Shown in pieces: positions 17,118 through 22,530 of a DNA stretch of 64,000 nucleotides. Within the stretch, counting starts at the first letter, position 1; each line of letters opens with the position of its first letter. Both the position numbers and the translations under genes were made by a program. The DNA lies in the IMG/VR virus record IMGVR_UViG_3300035698_007246, positions 124,001 through 188,000 of that record, one strand, 5' to 3'. The notes under the pieces are model-generated. The model saw only the letters and a program-made list of their open reading frames with translations, made no database searches and was not told the DNA's origin.

Positions 17118-17259
17118 ATAGACTACAAATTGAGTTTTTACTTATCCATTGCCTGAACCAATTCAGCTACACCCCTTCATCACAAAGGAGAGGTTGGACT
17201 CGAACCAACATACCACGGTTTTTGTAATTTTGATTGCTGTATTCAATCTTCAAGTCTAT
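17118..17259 (-). ncRNA. clamp element A with permuted, anticodon-less tRNA mimic
   Basis: P1 ATAGACT/AGTCTAT; clamp consensus; T arm and acceptor 3' strand precede acceptor 5' strand and D arm. Confidence 0.75.
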
Positions 17260-17272
17260 TATGAATTATAAA

Positions 17273-17607
17273 ATATTCTTTACAAATTAACTGTCCCTTG
17301 AATCGAGACTAATCTCCCCTAAGCACTCACTGCTAAATTCCCCCAATTGAATATTATCCCATAAATAAAGATTTATTTAAAATCATCAGTTTTCTCCCCT
17401 CATACTTTTTTATGCTTTCACAGTATGTTAAACAGTAACCCTTAATCACACTACTAAAGCCCCGGAGGTATTCACATCATTTGAAATTAATACTTTATTG
17501 AAATAATACCCAATTGGGAGAGTTCGGATTCGAACCAAACACACTATTTCCATAGTCAGGGTTTTACTTTAGATATTAATTGCTGTATTCAATCTTCAAA
17601 AGAACAT
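17273..17607 (-). ncRNA. clamp element B with permuted tRNA mimic and about 150-nt structured linker
   Basis: P1 ATGTTCTTT/AAAGAATAT; T arm TTTGG-TTCGAAT-CCGAA; acceptor CTCTCCCAATTG/CAATTGGGGGAA. Confidence 0.7.
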
Positions 17608-17834
17608 TTAATGTAATTTGTACGAACAGTATCCATACAATCTGGACACACTAATAAAGAAATAGTATCGTTAACACCATTTCCTATTATTCTACCACAC
17701 ACAATACAAGATTCTTGATAAAATAAGTTTGGGTTATCACAATTACAATCATTAAATATCAATTCTCCATTCTTAGATGTGATTCTTTTTGATATACAAT
17801 TTCCACAATTCAAACACAAACTTTTTTTAGCCAT
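17589..17834 (-). CDS. Cys-rich hypothetical protein
   Basis: Several CxxC; stop TGA lies inside clamp B. Confidence 0.55.
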   Translation of the reverse strand: MAKKSLCLNCGNCISKRITSKNGELIFNDCNCDNPNLFYQESCIVCGRIIGNGVNDTISLLVCPDCMDTVRTNYIKCSFED

Positions 17835-17908
17835 TTACTGTTTTCCAAATTTTAGAACAATCATCAATCGGATTATGTTTATTATCAAAATCACTTTTTA
17901 AAGTCATT

Positions 17909-18337
17909 TTATTTGCCTTTTTTAAACTTGTCACCACTATCAATGATGTTTGTCGGTGCTCCATCTTTAAGAATTTGTCCTTCACCAGTCACTTCTTTGG
18001 GAGTTCCTTCTTTTGCTTTTTTCTCAGCAAGAAACTTCAACCTTTCAAACTTCAATATAGGGTCACATTTGCCCGGAAACTTTGCGGTGACAGTATTAGA
18101 ACACTGAGTTCCTTTTAAGTCCACACAGCCCTTACAGACCCCATCAAACCACTCATCTGAAATACCTTTAGGTTTTGATATGGGTGTACCTGCATTTGCT
18201 TCTTTAATTTTCACAAAAATCCCATCAATAACACCGGATAATTTATTTATACCGTCTGGTGGAAGTTCTTGTCTTGCAAGTTGTAAATATACTTTACAAG
18301 CGTATTCTAATAATCCTATTTCTTGTTCTGTTAACAT
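17909..18337 (-). CDS. hypothetical protein
   Basis: 142 aa, AAGGA RBS. Confidence 0.6.
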   Translation of the reverse strand: MLTEQEIGLLEYACKVYLQLARQELPPDGINKLSGVIDGIFVKIKEANAGTPISKPKGISDEWFDGVCKGCVDLKGTQCSNTVTAKFPGKCDPILKFERLKFLAEKKAKEGTPKEVTGEGQILKDGAPTNIIDSGDKFKKGK

Positions 18338-18639
18338 TATTTATTCCTTTCAAACACTGGGGATGTCATTTCGTGTACTTCACGACTAATCTCAGATTTA
18401 CGTTTAGCGTTCTTAAATTTAGGTATAGCAACAGTAGCCAATATACCAATAATGACAATCAATATCATTAATTCTAATAAAGTGAAACCACCCGAAGGGC
18501 AATTATCATTAAACATTTTTTTATCATCGTCACTGTAACAATCTGGTTCCGATTCAGGCTCTTCATACATCAATGGTCTTCTTGAAGATTGATTATGAGT
18601 TTTTTTTGGTTCATCAAAATAGTCATCGTACACACTCAT
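18337..18639 (-). CDS. type IV pilin/pseudopilin-like protein
   Basis: GFTLLELMILIVIIGILATVAIPKF prepilin N-methyl-Phe motif. Confidence 0.75.
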   Translation of the reverse strand: MSVYDDYFDEPKKTHNQSSRRPLMYEEPESEPDCYSDDDKKMFNDNCPSGGFTLLELMILIVIIGILATVAIPKFKNAKRKSEISREVHEMTSPVFERNK

Positions 18640-18653
18640 CTCCTTTGAAAAAA

Positions 18654-18710
18654 TGGAGCACAGGGAGGGATTTAACCCCCGACTAAAGAGTTAACAGCTC
18701 TTACCCATGC
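18654..18710 (-). tRNA. D-armless tRNA-Asn(GTT)-like
   Basis: GCATGGG/CCTGTGC-T-CCA, 1-nt connector, AAGAG-CTGTTAA-CTCTT, T arm with 6-nt loop. Confidence 0.6.
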
Positions 18711-18718
18711 ATTGTATT

Positions 18719-18795
18719 TGGCTGGCGGTCTGGGGTTCGAACCCAGATACACTTGTTTAACAGACAAGCCGATTACCAACATCTCGCAACCACCA
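18719..18795 (-). tRNA. tRNA-Asn(GTT)
   Basis: Cloverleaf, G73, CCA, loop CTGTTAA. Confidence 0.88.
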
Positions 18796-18801
18796 ATATA
18801 A

Positions 18802-18947
18802 AAAAAGAAGTAAACAAATTGATATTACCATTTGGTAGAAAATGTAAGATTTGAACTTACACATATTGCTTTTGAGGCAATTGCTCAACCATTGAGCTTA
18901 TTTTCCGATAGGAAATTTGCTGTAATCAATCTTCATTACTTCTTTTT
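18802..18947 (-). ncRNA. clamp element C enclosing an intact tRNA
   Basis: 12-bp P1 AAAAAGAAGTAA/TTACTTCTTTTT plus clamp consensus. Confidence 0.78.
18833..18906 (-). tRNA. tRNA with CAA anticodon and short variable loop (type I)
   Basis: GGAAAAT/ATTTTCT-A-CCA; ATTGC-CTCAAAA-GCAAT; 4-nt variable loop. Confidence 0.8.
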
Positions 18948-19228
18948 ATTTCTAAATATTTCTTTCTGATATTTTTATCATCACAATCATACATACCCAC
19001 CAAAAAATTTAAAGCTGGATATTTTTCAAAGTCTAAACTAAATCCAACCCATCGAGAGCCTTTTTGTGGTTTAATTCTTTCAGTGACACATTCTTGTCCC
19101 CATTTATCAACAACTTCAATTTTTGTTTTTTTGGATATTCCTTTTACAAAAACTGAAAAGTCATGAAGATAATGACACGTATCTAAAAACTCATCATATT
19201 CTTTTTGATTATCAAATATTATTTTCAT
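18926..19228 (-). CDS. hypothetical protein
   Basis: Follows early promoter; stop TGA inside clamp C. Confidence 0.6.
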   Translation of the reverse strand: MKIIFDNQKEYDEFLDTCHYLHDFSVFVKGISKKTKIEVVDKWGQECVTERIKPQKGSRWVGFSLDFEKYPALNFLVGMYDCDDKNIRKKYLEIKRSNED

Positions 19229-19234
19229 ATATCT

Positions 19235-19262
19235 AATATAATAAATTTTAAATGAAAGTCAA
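19235..19262 (-). promoter_or_regulatory. sigma70-like early promoter
   Basis: TTGACT-16-TATATT. Confidence 0.7.
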
Positions 19263-19271
19263 TAGTTAAAA

Positions 19272-19311
19272 TTATTTCTCCCAGAAAATAGAGGTATTCT
19301 GGGAGAAATAA
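19272..19311. terminator. inverted repeat/terminator-like hairpin
   Basis: TTATTTCTCCCAGAA...TTCTGGGAGAAATAA. Confidence 0.55.
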
Positions 19312-19357
19312 TCACAAATAACAACATTAACCAAAAAAAAGGATTGTTTTGAATTAG

Positions 19358-21408: not shown

Positions 21409-21420
21409 ATGTATTTAAAA

Positions 21421-21525
21421 GTAGTCCTCAAATTGTACTTTGCTCCCTGAGCAGTTATCCCCCATCATAGACACTCCTAAGAATGCCGATGGTGGGGGAT
21501 AACGGAATCGAACCGTTGAGTTTTG
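21421..21525 (-). ncRNA. permuted tRNA-like element with internal CCA
   Basis: AACGG-TTCGATT-CCGTT-ATCCCCC-A-CCA, hairpin linker, then GGGGGAT and TGCTC-AGG-GAGCA. Confidence 0.6.
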
Positions 21526-21629
21526 TTTGCTTTAGCTTTCCACAAGTTTGATTTAGTCACACCTGCGTAGTTTGTAATCTTTTCCATTAATCAACATTTC
21601 CTTCAATTAAGTTAAAAATACTTATTTTT

Positions 21630-21794
21630 AATAGTCTTTATGGAGTGATTTACAAATTGATATTATTCGTCGCTCTGCCAACTGAGCTACCCCTGCATAT
21701 TGAGAGCAGGGGACGAGAATCGAACTCGTGACCCACGGCTTGGAATGCTAAGATTGCTGTAATCAATCTTCAAAATCACTCTATAAAGACTATT
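21630..21794 (-). ncRNA. clamp element F with circularly permuted tRNA-Gly(TCC)
   Basis: 22-nt P1; 3' half 21705-21748 precedes 5' half 21668-21696; join ACG|GC gives ACGGC-ATTCCAA-GCCGT; U73. Confidence 0.85.
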
Positions 21795-21804
21795 GTAAAC
21801 GAAT

Positions 21805-21879
21805 TGGTACTCGGTAGGGGAATCGAACCCCTGCGATGTGGTCGAAAACCACATGTCCTTGCCGTTAGACGAACCGAGC
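21805..21879 (-). tRNA. tRNA-Glu(TTC)
   Basis: Canonical, loop TTTTCGA, CCA. Confidence 0.9.
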
Positions 21880-21884
21880 ATATA

Positions 21885-21965
21885 AGGAACACAATTTGAT
21901 TTTTAGCTACCTTTGTATTTAAAACAAATGCTTTTTTTGTTTGCTGAATTCAAACTTCAGTTCCC
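21885..21965 (-). ncRNA. clamp element G (minimal)
   Basis: Compensatory TTTGA/TCAAA; insert TTTGT-TTTAAAT-ACAAA. Confidence 0.72.
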
Positions 21966-21974
21966 ATGATTTAT

Positions 21975-22003
21975 AATATAATAAATGACATTTGAAATGT
22001 CAA
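21975..22003 (-). promoter_or_regulatory. sigma70-like early promoter
   Basis: TTGACA-17-TATATT. Confidence 0.75.
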
Positions 22004-22022
22004 TAGTTATTTTCAAAAAAAT

Positions 22023-22096
22023 ACCTTTGTTCGGACTCGAACCGAAAATCTCACGCATTAAAAGTGCGTTGCTTTAGCCAATTAAGCTACAAAGGC
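22023..22096 (-). tRNA. tRNA-Lys(TTT)
   Basis: Canonical, loop CTTTTAA. Confidence 0.9.
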
Positions 22097-22102
22097 ATAT
22101 AA

Positions 22103-22308
22103 AAGGACTCAGGCTGATATATTATATGGCTGCTCATACACAGGCTCTTTCGAGTTTCTGCCAGCGAGCAGGACATCATTCTTTCGTTTGATTTACCCCA
22201 GACACCGAAATGTCCATCTTGAACAAGACCGTAGCTCACGCCTTAGATATTGTCAACTACCTTAGAACCATTATTCATATAGACTGCTGAATTCAGCCTT
22301 CTGTCCTT
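22103..22308 (-). ncRNA. clamp element H with about 165-nt structured insert
   Basis: Compensatory GGCTGA/TCAGCC; TTCG and GAAA tetraloop hairpins. Confidence 0.7.
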
Positions 22309-22356
22309 ATGAGACTTGTTTGCAAATACGTCAAGGGAATGTTCTTCGTATTAAAA

Positions 22357-22433
22357 TGGTGGAAGTGAGGGGGATTGAACCCCTGACCTTCTGGTTGCAA
22401 ACCAGACGCTCGTCCCAACTGAGCTACACCCCC
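22357..22433 (-). tRNA. tRNA-Ala(TGC)
   Basis: G3:U70, canonical, CCA. Confidence 0.93.
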
Positions 22434-22437
22434 ATAT

Positions 22438-22530
22438 AAATCGCAACTCAGATTGATGTAAAGCGGTTAAACTTTTCAATAGTTTTGGAAACCTTTTTAG
22501 ATTGCTGAAATCAATCTTCAGTTGCGATTT
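22438..22530 (-). ncRNA. clamp element I (minimal)
   Basis: P1 AAATCGCAAC/GTTGCGATTT; insert AAACT-ATTGAAA-AGTTT. Confidence 0.75.

What the first reader, a model, noticed from the sequence alone, without database searches (positions are those of the whole stretch)
17118..22530. Nine-copy covarying RNA 'clamp' family that brackets tRNA-derived cargo
Nine elements (17118, 17273, 18802, 20267, 21222, 21630, 21885, 22103, 22438) share the same architecture. The 5' arm is P1-NGAAG-ATTGA-WTWCWGCAA and the 3' arm is TCAAT-YTGW-P1'. P1 differs in sequence in every copy but always pairs (6-22 bp). P2 shows compensatory changes (ATTGA/TCAAT, TTTGA/TCAAA, GCTGA/TCAGC, and A-U replacing G-Y in copy D). 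The asymmetric GA-rich internal loop and the unpaired CAGCAA are conserved. The cargo varies: permuted tRNAs, anticodon-less mimics, an intact tRNA, bare stem-loops and a larger ncRNA. I do not recognise this as a named family. Inference: it is a processing or circularisation signal (a ribozyme or an enzyme substrate) that brings the two ends of the cargo together.
Basis: partly seen in the sequence, partly recalled or inferred. Interest (0 to 1): 0.95.

Follow-up and report, generated by a model that had tools for sequence, protein, structure and literature searches.

The report
Phage Y RNAs with a shared handle
The nine "clamped" RNAs are real. They are most likely a family of phage Y RNAs that share one stem, which probably docks onto a Ro60-like ring protein encoded just outside the window, and this would give an abundant, poorly understood phage protein its RNA partners.

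Summary
Nine minus-strand elements at 17117-22530 share this layout: P1 (sequence varies, always pairs), N-GA, P2 (7 bp, covaries), U-N-CAGCAA-W-C-A-rich tract, variable cargo, P2', G-W, P1'. A covariance model finds exactly these nine in window 1-30000, with E from 1e-14 to 2.5e-4. In 63 copies from many phages, 97.5% of cells pair and 11 of 12 pairs show compensatory changes.

The interpretation needs changing. No known ribozyme matches, and I found no sign of circularisation. The same handle RNAs lie on the same strand as a phage gene, DUF2828+DUF7788, and mostly right beside it. There are 114 hits in 52 of 80 such loci, and none in 98 control loci. The predicted structure of that protein matches Ro60 in all ten top PDB hits. 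The window's own phage carries this gene 386 bp left of window position 1, on the same strand.

The layout is that of a Y RNA: terminal stem, bulge with (U)GAA(G), second stem, variable module. The "permuted tRNAs" are YrlA-type tRNA-like domains. So the clamp is probably the Ro-binding handle, and the cargoes are interchangeable effector modules.

This is a new variant of a known kind. Felix O1-like coliphages also carry the handle, unannotated, which makes it testable.

The parts
17117..17260 (-). Copy A: handle (P1 8 bp) plus a tRNA-like cargo of T-arm, closed acceptor-like stem and D-arm (YrlA-type).
   Evidence: Model R2 gives 50.6 bits, E 5e-10. There is a weak Rfam YrlA hit at 17119-17228.
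17271..17609 (-). Copy B: handle (P1 11 bp including one G.U; P2 GAUUGA/UUAAUU) around a 289-nt cargo that contains a T-arm.
   Evidence: The 5' arm is an exact match at 17580-17597. The model picks a nearer 3' partner because the cargo is long. L081 4755-4964 is an orthologue with matching ends.
18802..18947 (-). Copy C: handle (P1 12 bp) around a complete tRNA-shaped gene. ARAGORN calls it Leu-CAA at 18833-18906, but it has a short variable arm.
   Evidence: The orthologue L081 3378-3525 has a shifted anticodon (ACA), so the anticodon is not conserved.
20267..20448 (-). Copy D: variant handle (UGAA-AAUUGG ... UCAAUU-UGU, with CUGCAA) around a 134-nt cargo with a T-arm.
   Evidence: R2 gives 37 bits, E 1e-6. 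Orthologues are L081 537-749 and L225 2946-3121.
21222..21408 (-). Copy E: handle (P1 12 bp, GGAAG, CUGCAA) plus a YrlA-type tRNA-like cargo with a long closed acceptor-like stem.
   Evidence: Rfam YrlA scores 30.7 bits against a threshold of 69; only the tRNA-like part aligns. R2 E 2.6e-8.
21630..21794 (-). Copy F: handle (P1 of 22 positions with one A.C mismatch) plus a YrlA-type tRNA-like cargo.
   Evidence: Rfam YrlA scores 36.7 bits over model positions 23-88 only. R2 E 1.7e-7.
21885..21965 (-). Copy G: minimal form, with the handle (P2 GUUUGA/UCAAAU) and one A/U hairpin.
   Evidence: R2 gives 69.5 bits, E 1.3e-14.
21975..22003 (-). Sigma-70-like promoter (TTGACA, 17 nt, TATATT; 11 of 12 matches). 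It ends about 10 nt upstream of the P1 of copy G.
   Evidence: This is a consensus match only. Similar promoters precede handle RNAs in L282.
22103..22308 (-). Copy H: variant handle (AGAA-GGCUGA ... UCAGCC-UGA, with CAGCAG) around a 166-nt cargo of unknown type.
   Evidence: R2 gives 33.8 bits, E 7e-6.
22438..22530 (-). Copy I: minimal form, with the handle (P1 10 bp) and a small hairpin cargo. Its P1' ends 4 nt before tRNA-Ala.
   Evidence: R2 gives 61.8 bits, E 1e-12.

Best explanation
The nine elements are phage-encoded Y RNAs. Each is a small stable RNA whose 5' and 3' ends pair to form a common handle. The handle is P1, an N-GA/G-W internal loop carrying the invariant GAAG, a 7-bp P2, and a single-stranded U-N-CAGCAA-W-C-A-rich tract.

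The handle is most likely the docking site for the phage's Ro60-like ring protein (Pfam DUF2828 + DUF7788/vWA, 485 aa). That protein is encoded on the same strand, 386 bp beyond the left edge of the window.

The variable cargo is the effector module. In the window it is a YrlA-type tRNA mimic in three copies, a whole tRNA shape in one, a hairpin in two and a larger fold in three. By analogy with Ro60/Y RNA/PNPase particles, the cargo would tether the ring to other factors or substrates. One protein could then be specialised nine ways for RNA surveillance, tRNA repair or counter-defence during infection.

The RNAs are made from the tRNA-array transcripts, and at least copy G may have its own promoter. 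Their 3' ends could be set by RNase P cutting at the tRNA that follows 4-12 nt downstream.

Shown: the RNA structure and its covariation, the genomic linkage to the protein gene, and the Ro60 fold of the protein. Inferred: direct binding, which residues are contacted, and the biological role.
For: 1. Structure. RNAalifold recovers P1 and P2. In 25 copies 99.6% of cells pair, and in 63 copies 97.5% pair, against 66-72% in shuffles and 29-49% when partners are slid. Compensatory changes occur in 9 of 12 and 11 of 12 pairs. GAAG, U-N-CAGCAA and UG are invariant or nearly so in the 63 RNAs.

2. Linkage to the protein gene.
- L282 reads: promoter, 3-4 tandem handle RNAs, RBS, DUF2828 gene.
- L409 and L410 have two handle RNAs directly before the gene, with RtcB 4 kb downstream.
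- Across 80 viral loci centred on the gene, model R1 gave 85 hits and R2 gave 114 hits in 52 loci. Every hit is on the gene's strand, and most lie within 300 nt upstream or downstream of the gene. This holds even where the proteins share only 32-36% identity.
- Control: 0 hits in 98 unrelated viral loci (842 kb), each of which contains the 5'-arm 18-mer by chance.

3. The window's own contig carries an intact gene at L415:3980-5437, which is 386 bp left of window position 1 on the minus strand.

4. Protein fold. The AlphaFold2 model has pLDDT 91 and pTM 0.90. The ten best PDB matches are all Ro60: Xenopus, human, Deinococcus Rsr and Thermus phage phiLo, with TM 0.39-0.62 (0.52-0.62 for nine of them; Deinococcus Rsr 0.39) and probability 1.00. 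A DxSxS MIDAS motif is conserved.

5. Match to the Y RNA definition. Y RNAs have a 5'-3' stem, a bulge with CGAA, and a second stem (PMC12135203). Bacterial Y RNAs carry GNCGAAN0-1G near the 5' end plus a T / closed-acceptor / D tRNA-like domain (PMC4201824). Copies A, E and F hit Rfam YrlA through that tRNA-like domain. Some gene-adjacent copies read CGAAG (L411).

6. Independent biology. Mycobacteriophage homologues are annotated as Ro-like RNA binding protein. Listeria phage CKA15 makes very abundant RNAs within 2 kb upstream of its Rsr-like gene (PMC12282133). Bas63 gp130 is Ro60-like, sits at a tRNA array and counters the Ppl defence (bioRxiv 10.1101/2024.10.10.617714).
Against: - No binding has been measured.
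- The bulge reads UGAA in most copies, not the canonical CGAA, and the GNC part of the bacterial motif is not conserved.
- Rfam's YrlA stem does not align to the handle, and the best YrlA score is 36.7 bits against a threshold of 69.
- Pfam TROVE does not match the protein, even at E 10.
- In the window's own phage the RNAs lie 17-23 kb from the gene, and no handle RNA was found within 4 kb of it.
- 28 of the 80 Ro-like loci gave no hit, and neither did KVP40 or Listeria LP-048 within 3-4 kb of the gene.
- The conserved CAGCAA/A-rich tract has no described counterpart in Y RNAs.
Confidence: 0.7

Rival explanations
1. The handle is a processing and stability element. It would act like the stems that flank rRNAs or the RNase III sites of T7. 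A host or phage endonuclease cuts it, or it simply shields the ends from exonucleases, so that odd small RNAs can be excised from the long tRNA-array transcript. The nearby Ro-like gene would only be a neighbour in the same RNA-metabolism region.
For: The elements are packed 4-12 nt from tRNAs on the same strand. P1 reaches 22 bp. The stem with an internal loop resembles known RNase III substrates (my own knowledge). In the window the RNAs are far from the Ro-like gene.
Against: About 16 invariant non-helical nucleotides, including a 9-15 nt single-stranded tract inside the RNA, are more than end protection or RNase III needs. P1 can be as short as 5-6 bp. All 114 hits share the strand of the Ro-like gene, mostly directly adjacent to it, at down to 32% protein identity, and many of those loci have no handle hits other than those next to the gene. 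That pattern is hard to explain by neighbourhood alone.
Confidence: 0.12
2. The clamp is a self-cleaving or self-ligating ribozyme, or the substrate of a splicing-type endonuclease and ligase. It joins the ends of the cargo, making circles or un-permuting the tRNA halves.
For: There is a conserved core with variable flanking helices, as in small ribozymes. The tRNA-like cargoes are permuted relative to the RNA ends. RtcB ligase genes lie near the Ro-like gene in L409 and in Listeria phage LP-048.
Against: No Rfam ribozyme matches at E up to 5, even on the minimal copies. There is no bulge-helix-bulge motif. The joined loop would read UGUUGAA, with G at the universal U33 position (read from the sequence). 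ARAGORN on head-to-tail dimers finds no tRNA without allowing a 45-85 nt 'intron', and it assigns different anticodons to orthologues. Hairpin and large cargoes have nothing to un-permute. Closed-acceptor tRNA-like domains are already explained by YrlA-type Y RNAs (PMC4201824).
Confidence: 0.06
3. The handles are cis-acting operators in the leader of the Ro-like gene and serve to autoregulate its translation. The copies in the tRNA array are decoys, or relics of duplication.
For: In many loci the last handle ends 10-25 nt before the RBS of the gene.
Against: In the window, nine conserved copies with cargoes that are orthologous across phages lie 17-23 kb from the gene. In Sf17 they lie downstream of the gene, between tRNAs. 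Tandem arrays with separate promoters fit independent RNAs better. This idea is compatible with the RNAs also being Y RNAs.
Confidence: 0.07

Closest known systems
Bacterial and phage Y RNAs of the YrlA type, bound by Ro60/Rsr (Rfam RF02553; Chen et al. 2014, PMC4201824)
   Same: The 5' and 3' ends pair into a stem / bulge / stem. A GAA-containing motif lies on the 5' strand at the bulge. The tRNA-like domain is made of a T-arm, a closed acceptor-like stem and a D-arm. The RNAs are encoded with a Ro60-fold protein, often near RtcB.
   Different: - The handle sequence differs: UGAAG rather than GNCGAAN0-1G, plus an invariant U-N-CAGCAA-W-C-A-rich tract and a UG on the 3' strand.
- The Rfam model aligns only to the tRNA-like part and stays below threshold.
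- There are nine copies per genome rather than one to a few.
- The copies are embedded in a tRNA array.
- Many cargoes are not tRNA-like. Some hold a whole tRNA, and some an acceptor-less tRNA (Yrn1-like topology).
Thermus phage phiLo Ro60 with Yrl1/Yrl2 (PMC12135203; PDB 9L5Y)
   Same: A phage-encoded Ro60-fold ring with phage-encoded stem-bulge-stem RNAs located next to the gene. 9L5Y is among the top structural matches to the DUF2828 protein.
   Different: phiLo has two RNAs with a CGAA bulge, and binding has been shown by EMSA and cryo-EM. Here binding is untested, the motif is different, and the RNA repertoire is much larger.
Bas63 gp130 (Felix O1-like coliphage): a Ro60-like protein that counters the Ppl defence (bioRxiv 10.1101/2024.10.10.617714)
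   Same: Probably the same protein family. Ro-like genes of Felix O1-like phages match the window phage's protein at about 30% identity, but Bas63 itself was not checked here. The gene also sits at the edge of a tRNA array. The authors guessed that some 'tRNAs' might be Y RNAs.
   Different: That work did not identify the RNAs. Here candidate RNAs are defined: unannotated handle RNAs lie between the tRNAs of the related phage Sf17.
T4 stable RNAs rnaC and rnaD (species 1 and 2) in the T4 tRNA cluster
   Same: Small stable RNAs of unknown function, co-transcribed with the tRNAs of a T4-type phage.
   Different: They do not carry the handle motif. T4 was not checked for a DUF2828 gene.
Circularly permuted tRNA genes processed through a bulge-helix-bulge motif (red algae, some archaea)
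   Same: The T-arm and 3' acceptor strand come before the 5' acceptor strand and D-arm in the gene.
   Different: There is no anticodon arm and no BHB motif. The acceptor stem is closed by a loop rather than being the processed end. No conserved anticodon appears after joining the ends.

Membership tests
Y RNA (Ro60-associated non-coding RNA) | The 5' and 3' ends pair into a terminal stem, with a stem / internal bulge / stem layout | tested here: met
   P1, a 3x2 loop and P2 are recovered by RNAalifold. They are supported by covariation in 25 and in 63 copies.
Y RNA (Ro60-associated non-coding RNA) | Conserved CGAA / GNCGAAN0-1G motif on the 5' strand at the bulge (PMC4201824, PMC12135203) | tested here: inconclusive
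   GAAG is invariant. The preceding base is U in 47 of 55 copies, A in 5, C in 2 and G in 1, and GNC is not conserved. L411 reads ACGAAG.
Y RNA (Ro60-associated non-coding RNA) | Encoded together with a Ro60 orthologue | tested here: met
   There are 114 same-strand hits in 52 of 80 loci centred on the gene, and 0 in 98 control loci. The gene is present in the window's own contig. The protein fold matches Ro60.
Y RNA (Ro60-associated non-coding RNA) | Physically bound by Ro60 | not testable with these tools
   This needs RIP/CLIP or EMSA.
Rfam YrlA (RF02553) | Score at or above the gathering threshold (69 bits) over the whole model | tested here: not met
   The best scores are 36.7, 30.7 and 19.3 bits. 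Only the T / acceptor-like / D part aligns, and the stem columns are mismatched or gapped.
Rfam YrlA (RF02553) | tRNA-like domain made of a T-arm, a closed acceptor-like stem and a D-arm | tested here: met
   Copies A, E and F have it, and so do at least nine copies in related loci.
Ro60 / TROVE proteins (the proposed partner) | HEAT-repeat ring plus a vWA domain with a MIDAS motif | tested here: met
   The AlphaFold2 model has pLDDT 91. The top 10 Foldseek PDB hits are all Ro60 over the full length. DxSxS is conserved.
Ro60 / TROVE proteins (the proposed partner) | Match to Pfam TROVE (PF05731) | tested here: not met
   Only DUF2828 and DUF7788 match. TROVE does not appear even at E 10.
Permuted tRNA genes with BHB processing | Bulge-helix-bulge motif at the junction, and a complete tRNA with a conserved anticodon arm after the ends are joined | tested here: not met
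   The loop is 3x2 next to a 7-bp helix. ARAGORN needs 45-85 nt 'introns' and gives tcc, aaa and cta for three orthologous copies.
Known self-cleaving ribozymes (hammerhead, hairpin, twister, twister-sister, pistol, hatchet, HDV-like) | Match to the family covariance model | tested here: not met
   No such family appears at E up to 5 in 16500-23500 on either strand.

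The most novel reading that the evidence does not exclude
The handle may be a universal adaptor. It would let one phage Ro-like ring carry a library of interchangeable baits: closed-acceptor tRNA mimics, acceptor-less tRNAs, even a whole tRNA, and non-tRNA folds. Each bait would direct the particle to a different host or phage factor. 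Candidates are tRNA-cleaving or other defence nucleases such as Ppl, RtcB-type repair, and PNPase. The tRNA array would then double as an anti-defence RNA arsenal, and the CAGCAA/A-rich strand would be a new recognition element threaded into or onto the ring.
Probability: 0.25. Interest if true: 0.85.

Novelty: new variant of a known kind. Interest (0 to 1): 0.62.

Why it matters
DUF2828 proteins with a Ro60 fold occur in at least 693 sequenced phages. These include KVP40-like, Felix O1-like, Listeria P100-like and mycobacteriophages. More than 6000 protein clusters turn up in metagenomes.

Their RNA partners have only been guessed at in these phages. One homologue has just been linked to escape from a bacterial defence system.

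This finding defines a concrete RNA family with clear covariation and a searchable model. It shows that a single phage can carry nine members with different modules. It also places unannotated members between the tRNAs of Felix O1-like phages (seen here in Shigella phage Sf17), whose relatives grow on E. coli K-12.

That makes three questions directly testable: what phage Ro particles bind, what the tRNA-like modules recruit, and why these RNAs live inside tRNA arrays. It also warns annotators that 'gaps' and odd tRNA-like calls in phage tRNA arrays can be Y RNAs.

Tried and rejected
- Rfam at gathering thresholds found only tRNAs. At E up to 5 it found only sub-threshold YrlA, tmRNA-like and chance hits.
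- T4 rnaC and rnaD were read and lack the motif.
- Several motif ideas were checked by eye against the covariation-supported register and dropped. A kink-turn would shift P2 by two positions and break the covarying pairs. The sarcin-ricin motif has the wrong order (UG, not GU). Hairpin-ribozyme loop A needs 4x4 and a loop B domain. A BHB motif is absent.
- A local UGAA/UUCA hairpin, and a CAG-CUG pseudoknot between the CAGCAA tract and the 3' arm, are possible in some copies. Neither is supported by consistent covariation (copies A, D, E, H).
- I considered an anticodon-loop mimic (YUGUN, as in GUN anticodons). I dropped it because the handle replaces the anticodon arm in some cargoes and the acceptor stem in others.
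- No TROVE, RtcB or RNA ligase was found among about 60 window ORFs scanned.
- Genome walking with the look-up of encoding contigs failed, because only contigs of 9 kb or less hold this phage there.
After filtering, real elements were found only in metagenome and viral contigs. None were found in the 120 bacterial-genome loci returned, so no host was identified.
- The literature searches found no description of this handle.

Full report
**What is in the window.** The region lies in a large tRNA array. ARAGORN finds 27 tRNA genes between 1.8 and 26.6 kb, all on the minus strand, and Rfam at curated thresholds finds only tRNAs. The genes to the right are a T4-type replication module: gp43 polymerase, clamp loader, UvsX, gp41, gp61, gp46/47, gp32 and NrdA. 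The polymerase is only about 30-33% identical to those of cyanomyophages. The window is therefore part of a distant T4-like myovirus. It maps to contig IMGVR_UViG_3300035698_007246 (223,879 bp) at positions 124001-188000.

**Checking the observation.** Read on the minus strand, each of the nine elements has the same layout:
- P1
- N-GAA
- G-AUUGA
- W-U-N-CAGCAA
- cargo
- UCAAU-Y
- UG-W
- P1'

The 5' arm pattern occurs 10 times at up to 3 mismatches, against 3.35 expected by chance. Five of these are exact. P1 has a different sequence in every copy and pairs in every copy.

I built a covariance model from seven short copies and rebuilt it from 63 copies. With filters off over window 1-30000 it finds exactly the nine elements and nothing else below E 0.3. 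RNAalifold gives a 7-bp P2 and a 3x2 internal loop.

**Covariation.** Pattern scans of viral and metagenome contigs, filtered for a complementary P2 and P1, gave many more copies in related phage contigs. P2 occurs in at least fifteen complementary versions. Examples are GAUUGG/CCAAUC, GAUUGU/ACAAUC, GAAGUA/UACUUC, GAUUCA/UGAAUC and GAGUUG/CAACUC.

| Alignment | Cells paired | Shuffled | Partners slid | Pairs with compensatory change |
|---|---|---|---|---|
| 25 copies | 99.6% | 71.6% | 29-44% | 9 of 12 |
| 63 copies | 97.5% | 66.2% | 34-49% | 11 of 12 |

These alignments were fitted to the model, which favours pairing. The raw scans, which used no model, show the same complementary changes.

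The invariant or nearly invariant bases are (U)GAAG, U-N-C-A-G-C-A-A and the 3' U-G. After CAGCAA come W, C and an A-rich run.

**What the cargoes are.** Rfam at relaxed thresholds gives sub-threshold hits to YrlA, the bacterial Y RNA family, on copies A, E and F. The alignments cover only the T-arm, a closed acceptor-like stem and the D-arm. That is the tRNA-like domain described for YrlA (PMC4201824), and it explains the 'permuted tRNA' look.

Other cargoes, in the window or in related loci, fall into four types:
- a whole tRNA shape, whose anticodon is not conserved in the orthologue
- tRNAs without an acceptor stem, the topology reported for Deinococcus Yrn1
- plain hairpins
- larger folds

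The handle can replace either the anticodon arm or the acceptor stem, so it does not mimic one particular part of a tRNA.

**The link to a protein.** In metagenome locus L282, three to four handle RNAs in tandem lie directly upstream of an ORF with Pfam DUF2828 and DUF7788, on the same strand. The family is very large: 6294 clusters, proteins of about 470 aa, many on contigs of 100-260 kb.

Around one homologue on a 226-kb contig, two handle RNAs lie immediately before the gene, and RtcB lies 4 kb downstream.

I then fetched 80 viral loci centred on the gene.
- Model R1 gave 85 hits, all on the gene's strand, and model R2 gave 114 hits in 52 of the 80 loci, also all on the gene's strand.
- Most hits lie just before the start codon or just after the stop.
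- In 98 unrelated viral loci (842 kb), each containing the 5'-arm 18-mer by chance, there were no hits.

One of the 80 loci, L415, is the window's own contig. It holds an intact 485-aa gene whose start lies 386 bp left of window position 1, on the minus strand. The gene is therefore downstream of the tRNA/handle array in the direction of transcription.

**What the protein is.** An AlphaFold2 model built from a 35-sequence alignment is confident (pLDDT 91, pTM 0.90). Its ten best PDB matches are all Ro60 over the full length: Xenopus, human, Deinococcus Rsr and Thermus phage phiLo. A DxSxS MIDAS motif is conserved. Pfam TROVE does not match, so this is a divergent Ro60-fold family.

In GenBank phages, 693 records carry it. 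It is annotated variously as RNA-binding protein, vWFA protein, DUF2828 or, in mycobacteriophages, Ro-like RNA binding protein. In KVP40, Sf17 and Listeria LP-048 it sits at a tRNA array, and LP-048 also has RtcB close by.

**Interpretation.** Y RNAs are defined by a 5'-3' stem, a bulge with CGAA and a second stem. They bind Ro60 and are encoded next to it (PMC4201824; PMC12135203). The handle has that layout, with UGAA(G) in place of CGAA, and it is tied to a Ro60-fold gene across deep divergence. I therefore read the nine elements as the Y RNA repertoire of this phage. The clamp is the Ro-binding handle, and the cargoes are effector modules.

Two recent studies fit this reading. Listeria phage CKA15 makes very abundant RNAs within 2 kb upstream of its Rsr-like gene (PMC12282133). 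Bas63 gp130 is Ro60-like, lies at a tRNA array and counters the Ppl defence, and its authors only guessed that some 'tRNAs' might be Y RNAs.

In the related phage Sf17, the model finds three unannotated handle RNAs between tRNAs just downstream of the gene. One of them has a tRNA-like cargo. 236 cultured-phage records hold most of that region.

**What remains open.**
- Binding is inferred, not shown.
- The bulge motif differs from the canonical one.
- The CAGCAA/A-rich tract has no known counterpart in Y RNAs.
- In this phage the RNAs lie 17-23 kb from the gene, not beside it.
- 28 of the 80 Ro-like loci gave no hit, and neither did KVP40 or LP-048. Other handle types probably exist.

I found no support for a ribozyme or a circularisation signal. 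No ribozyme family matches, there is no bulge-helix-bulge motif, and joining the ends does not produce a conserved anticodon arm. Only experiments can exclude it.

**Verdict.** The interpretation should be revised: this is a new, multi-copy, modular variant of the Ro60/Y RNA system, not a categorically new element. It is of real interest because it supplies the missing RNA partners for a very common phage protein.

Noticed in passing
window 21452-21517 (-), within the 21409-21630 spacer between copies E and F: A tmRNA-like tRNA domain: T-arm, then a 3' acceptor strand ending in CCA, a loop, then a 5' acceptor strand. This is the gene order of permuted two-piece tmRNAs. Rfam gives beta_tmRNA 40 bits (partial) and tmRNA_permuted 27 bits, both below threshold. 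ARAGORN calls no tmRNA.
   Followed up: partly
window about 17075-17105 (-), just downstream of copy A: What looks like the 5' half of a tRNA (acceptor strand plus D-arm, GCUGGUGUGGCUCAACUGGUAGAGCG) runs straight into an RBS and the ATG of ORF 16717-17064. This may be a tRNA gene disrupted by a gene insertion.
   Followed up: no
window 9485-9560 (-): A tRNA with anticodon CUA, which ARAGORN labels 'Pyl'. It is an amber suppressor, which hints at UAG read-through or recoding in this phage.
   Followed up: no
window 19300-19840 and 22560-22920 (-): Several T-arm-like motifs (GGUUCGAAUCC-type) and long complementary stretches that neither ARAGORN nor Rfam calls as tRNAs and that carry no handle. 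They may be further unannotated structured RNAs in the array.
   Followed up: no
L282 about 1090-1441 (-): The Ro-like gene appears to be interrupted. About 75 N-terminal codons end at a stop, and roughly 130 nt later a new RBS and ATG continue the protein. This could be an intron, a split gene or an assembly problem.
   Followed up: no
L158:1987-3210 (-): An IS605-type OrfB/TnpB (Cas12f-like TNB domain) gene sits between two handle RNAs in a related phage contig.
   Followed up: no
window 841-1440, 5808-6527, 25825-26319 (-): Three HNH endonuclease genes are scattered through the tRNA array. They are probably homing endonucleases that help shuffle the array.
   Followed up: no
window 10359-10721 (-) and 15863-16711 (-): A small Pol-beta-type nucleotidyltransferase (120 aa) and an R2K-clade ATP-grasp protein are encoded inside the tRNA array. 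Both are candidate RNA- or protein-modifying enzymes. The nucleotidyltransferase is conserved in L406.
   Followed up: no
L494 4707-4783, 4870-4943, 5414-5547 (Shigella phage Sf17, NC_042076.1 about 13025-13865): Handle RNAs lie in the unannotated gaps between tRNA genes of a RefSeq Felix O1-like phage. In some related records the same stretches are annotated as hypothetical proteins.
   Followed up: partly
window 38164-41835 (-): The NrdA-like ribonucleotide reductase ORF is 1223 aa. Family matches fall in two separated parts (residues about 215-290 and 690-1222), which suggests an insertion such as an intein or an extra domain.
   Followed up: no
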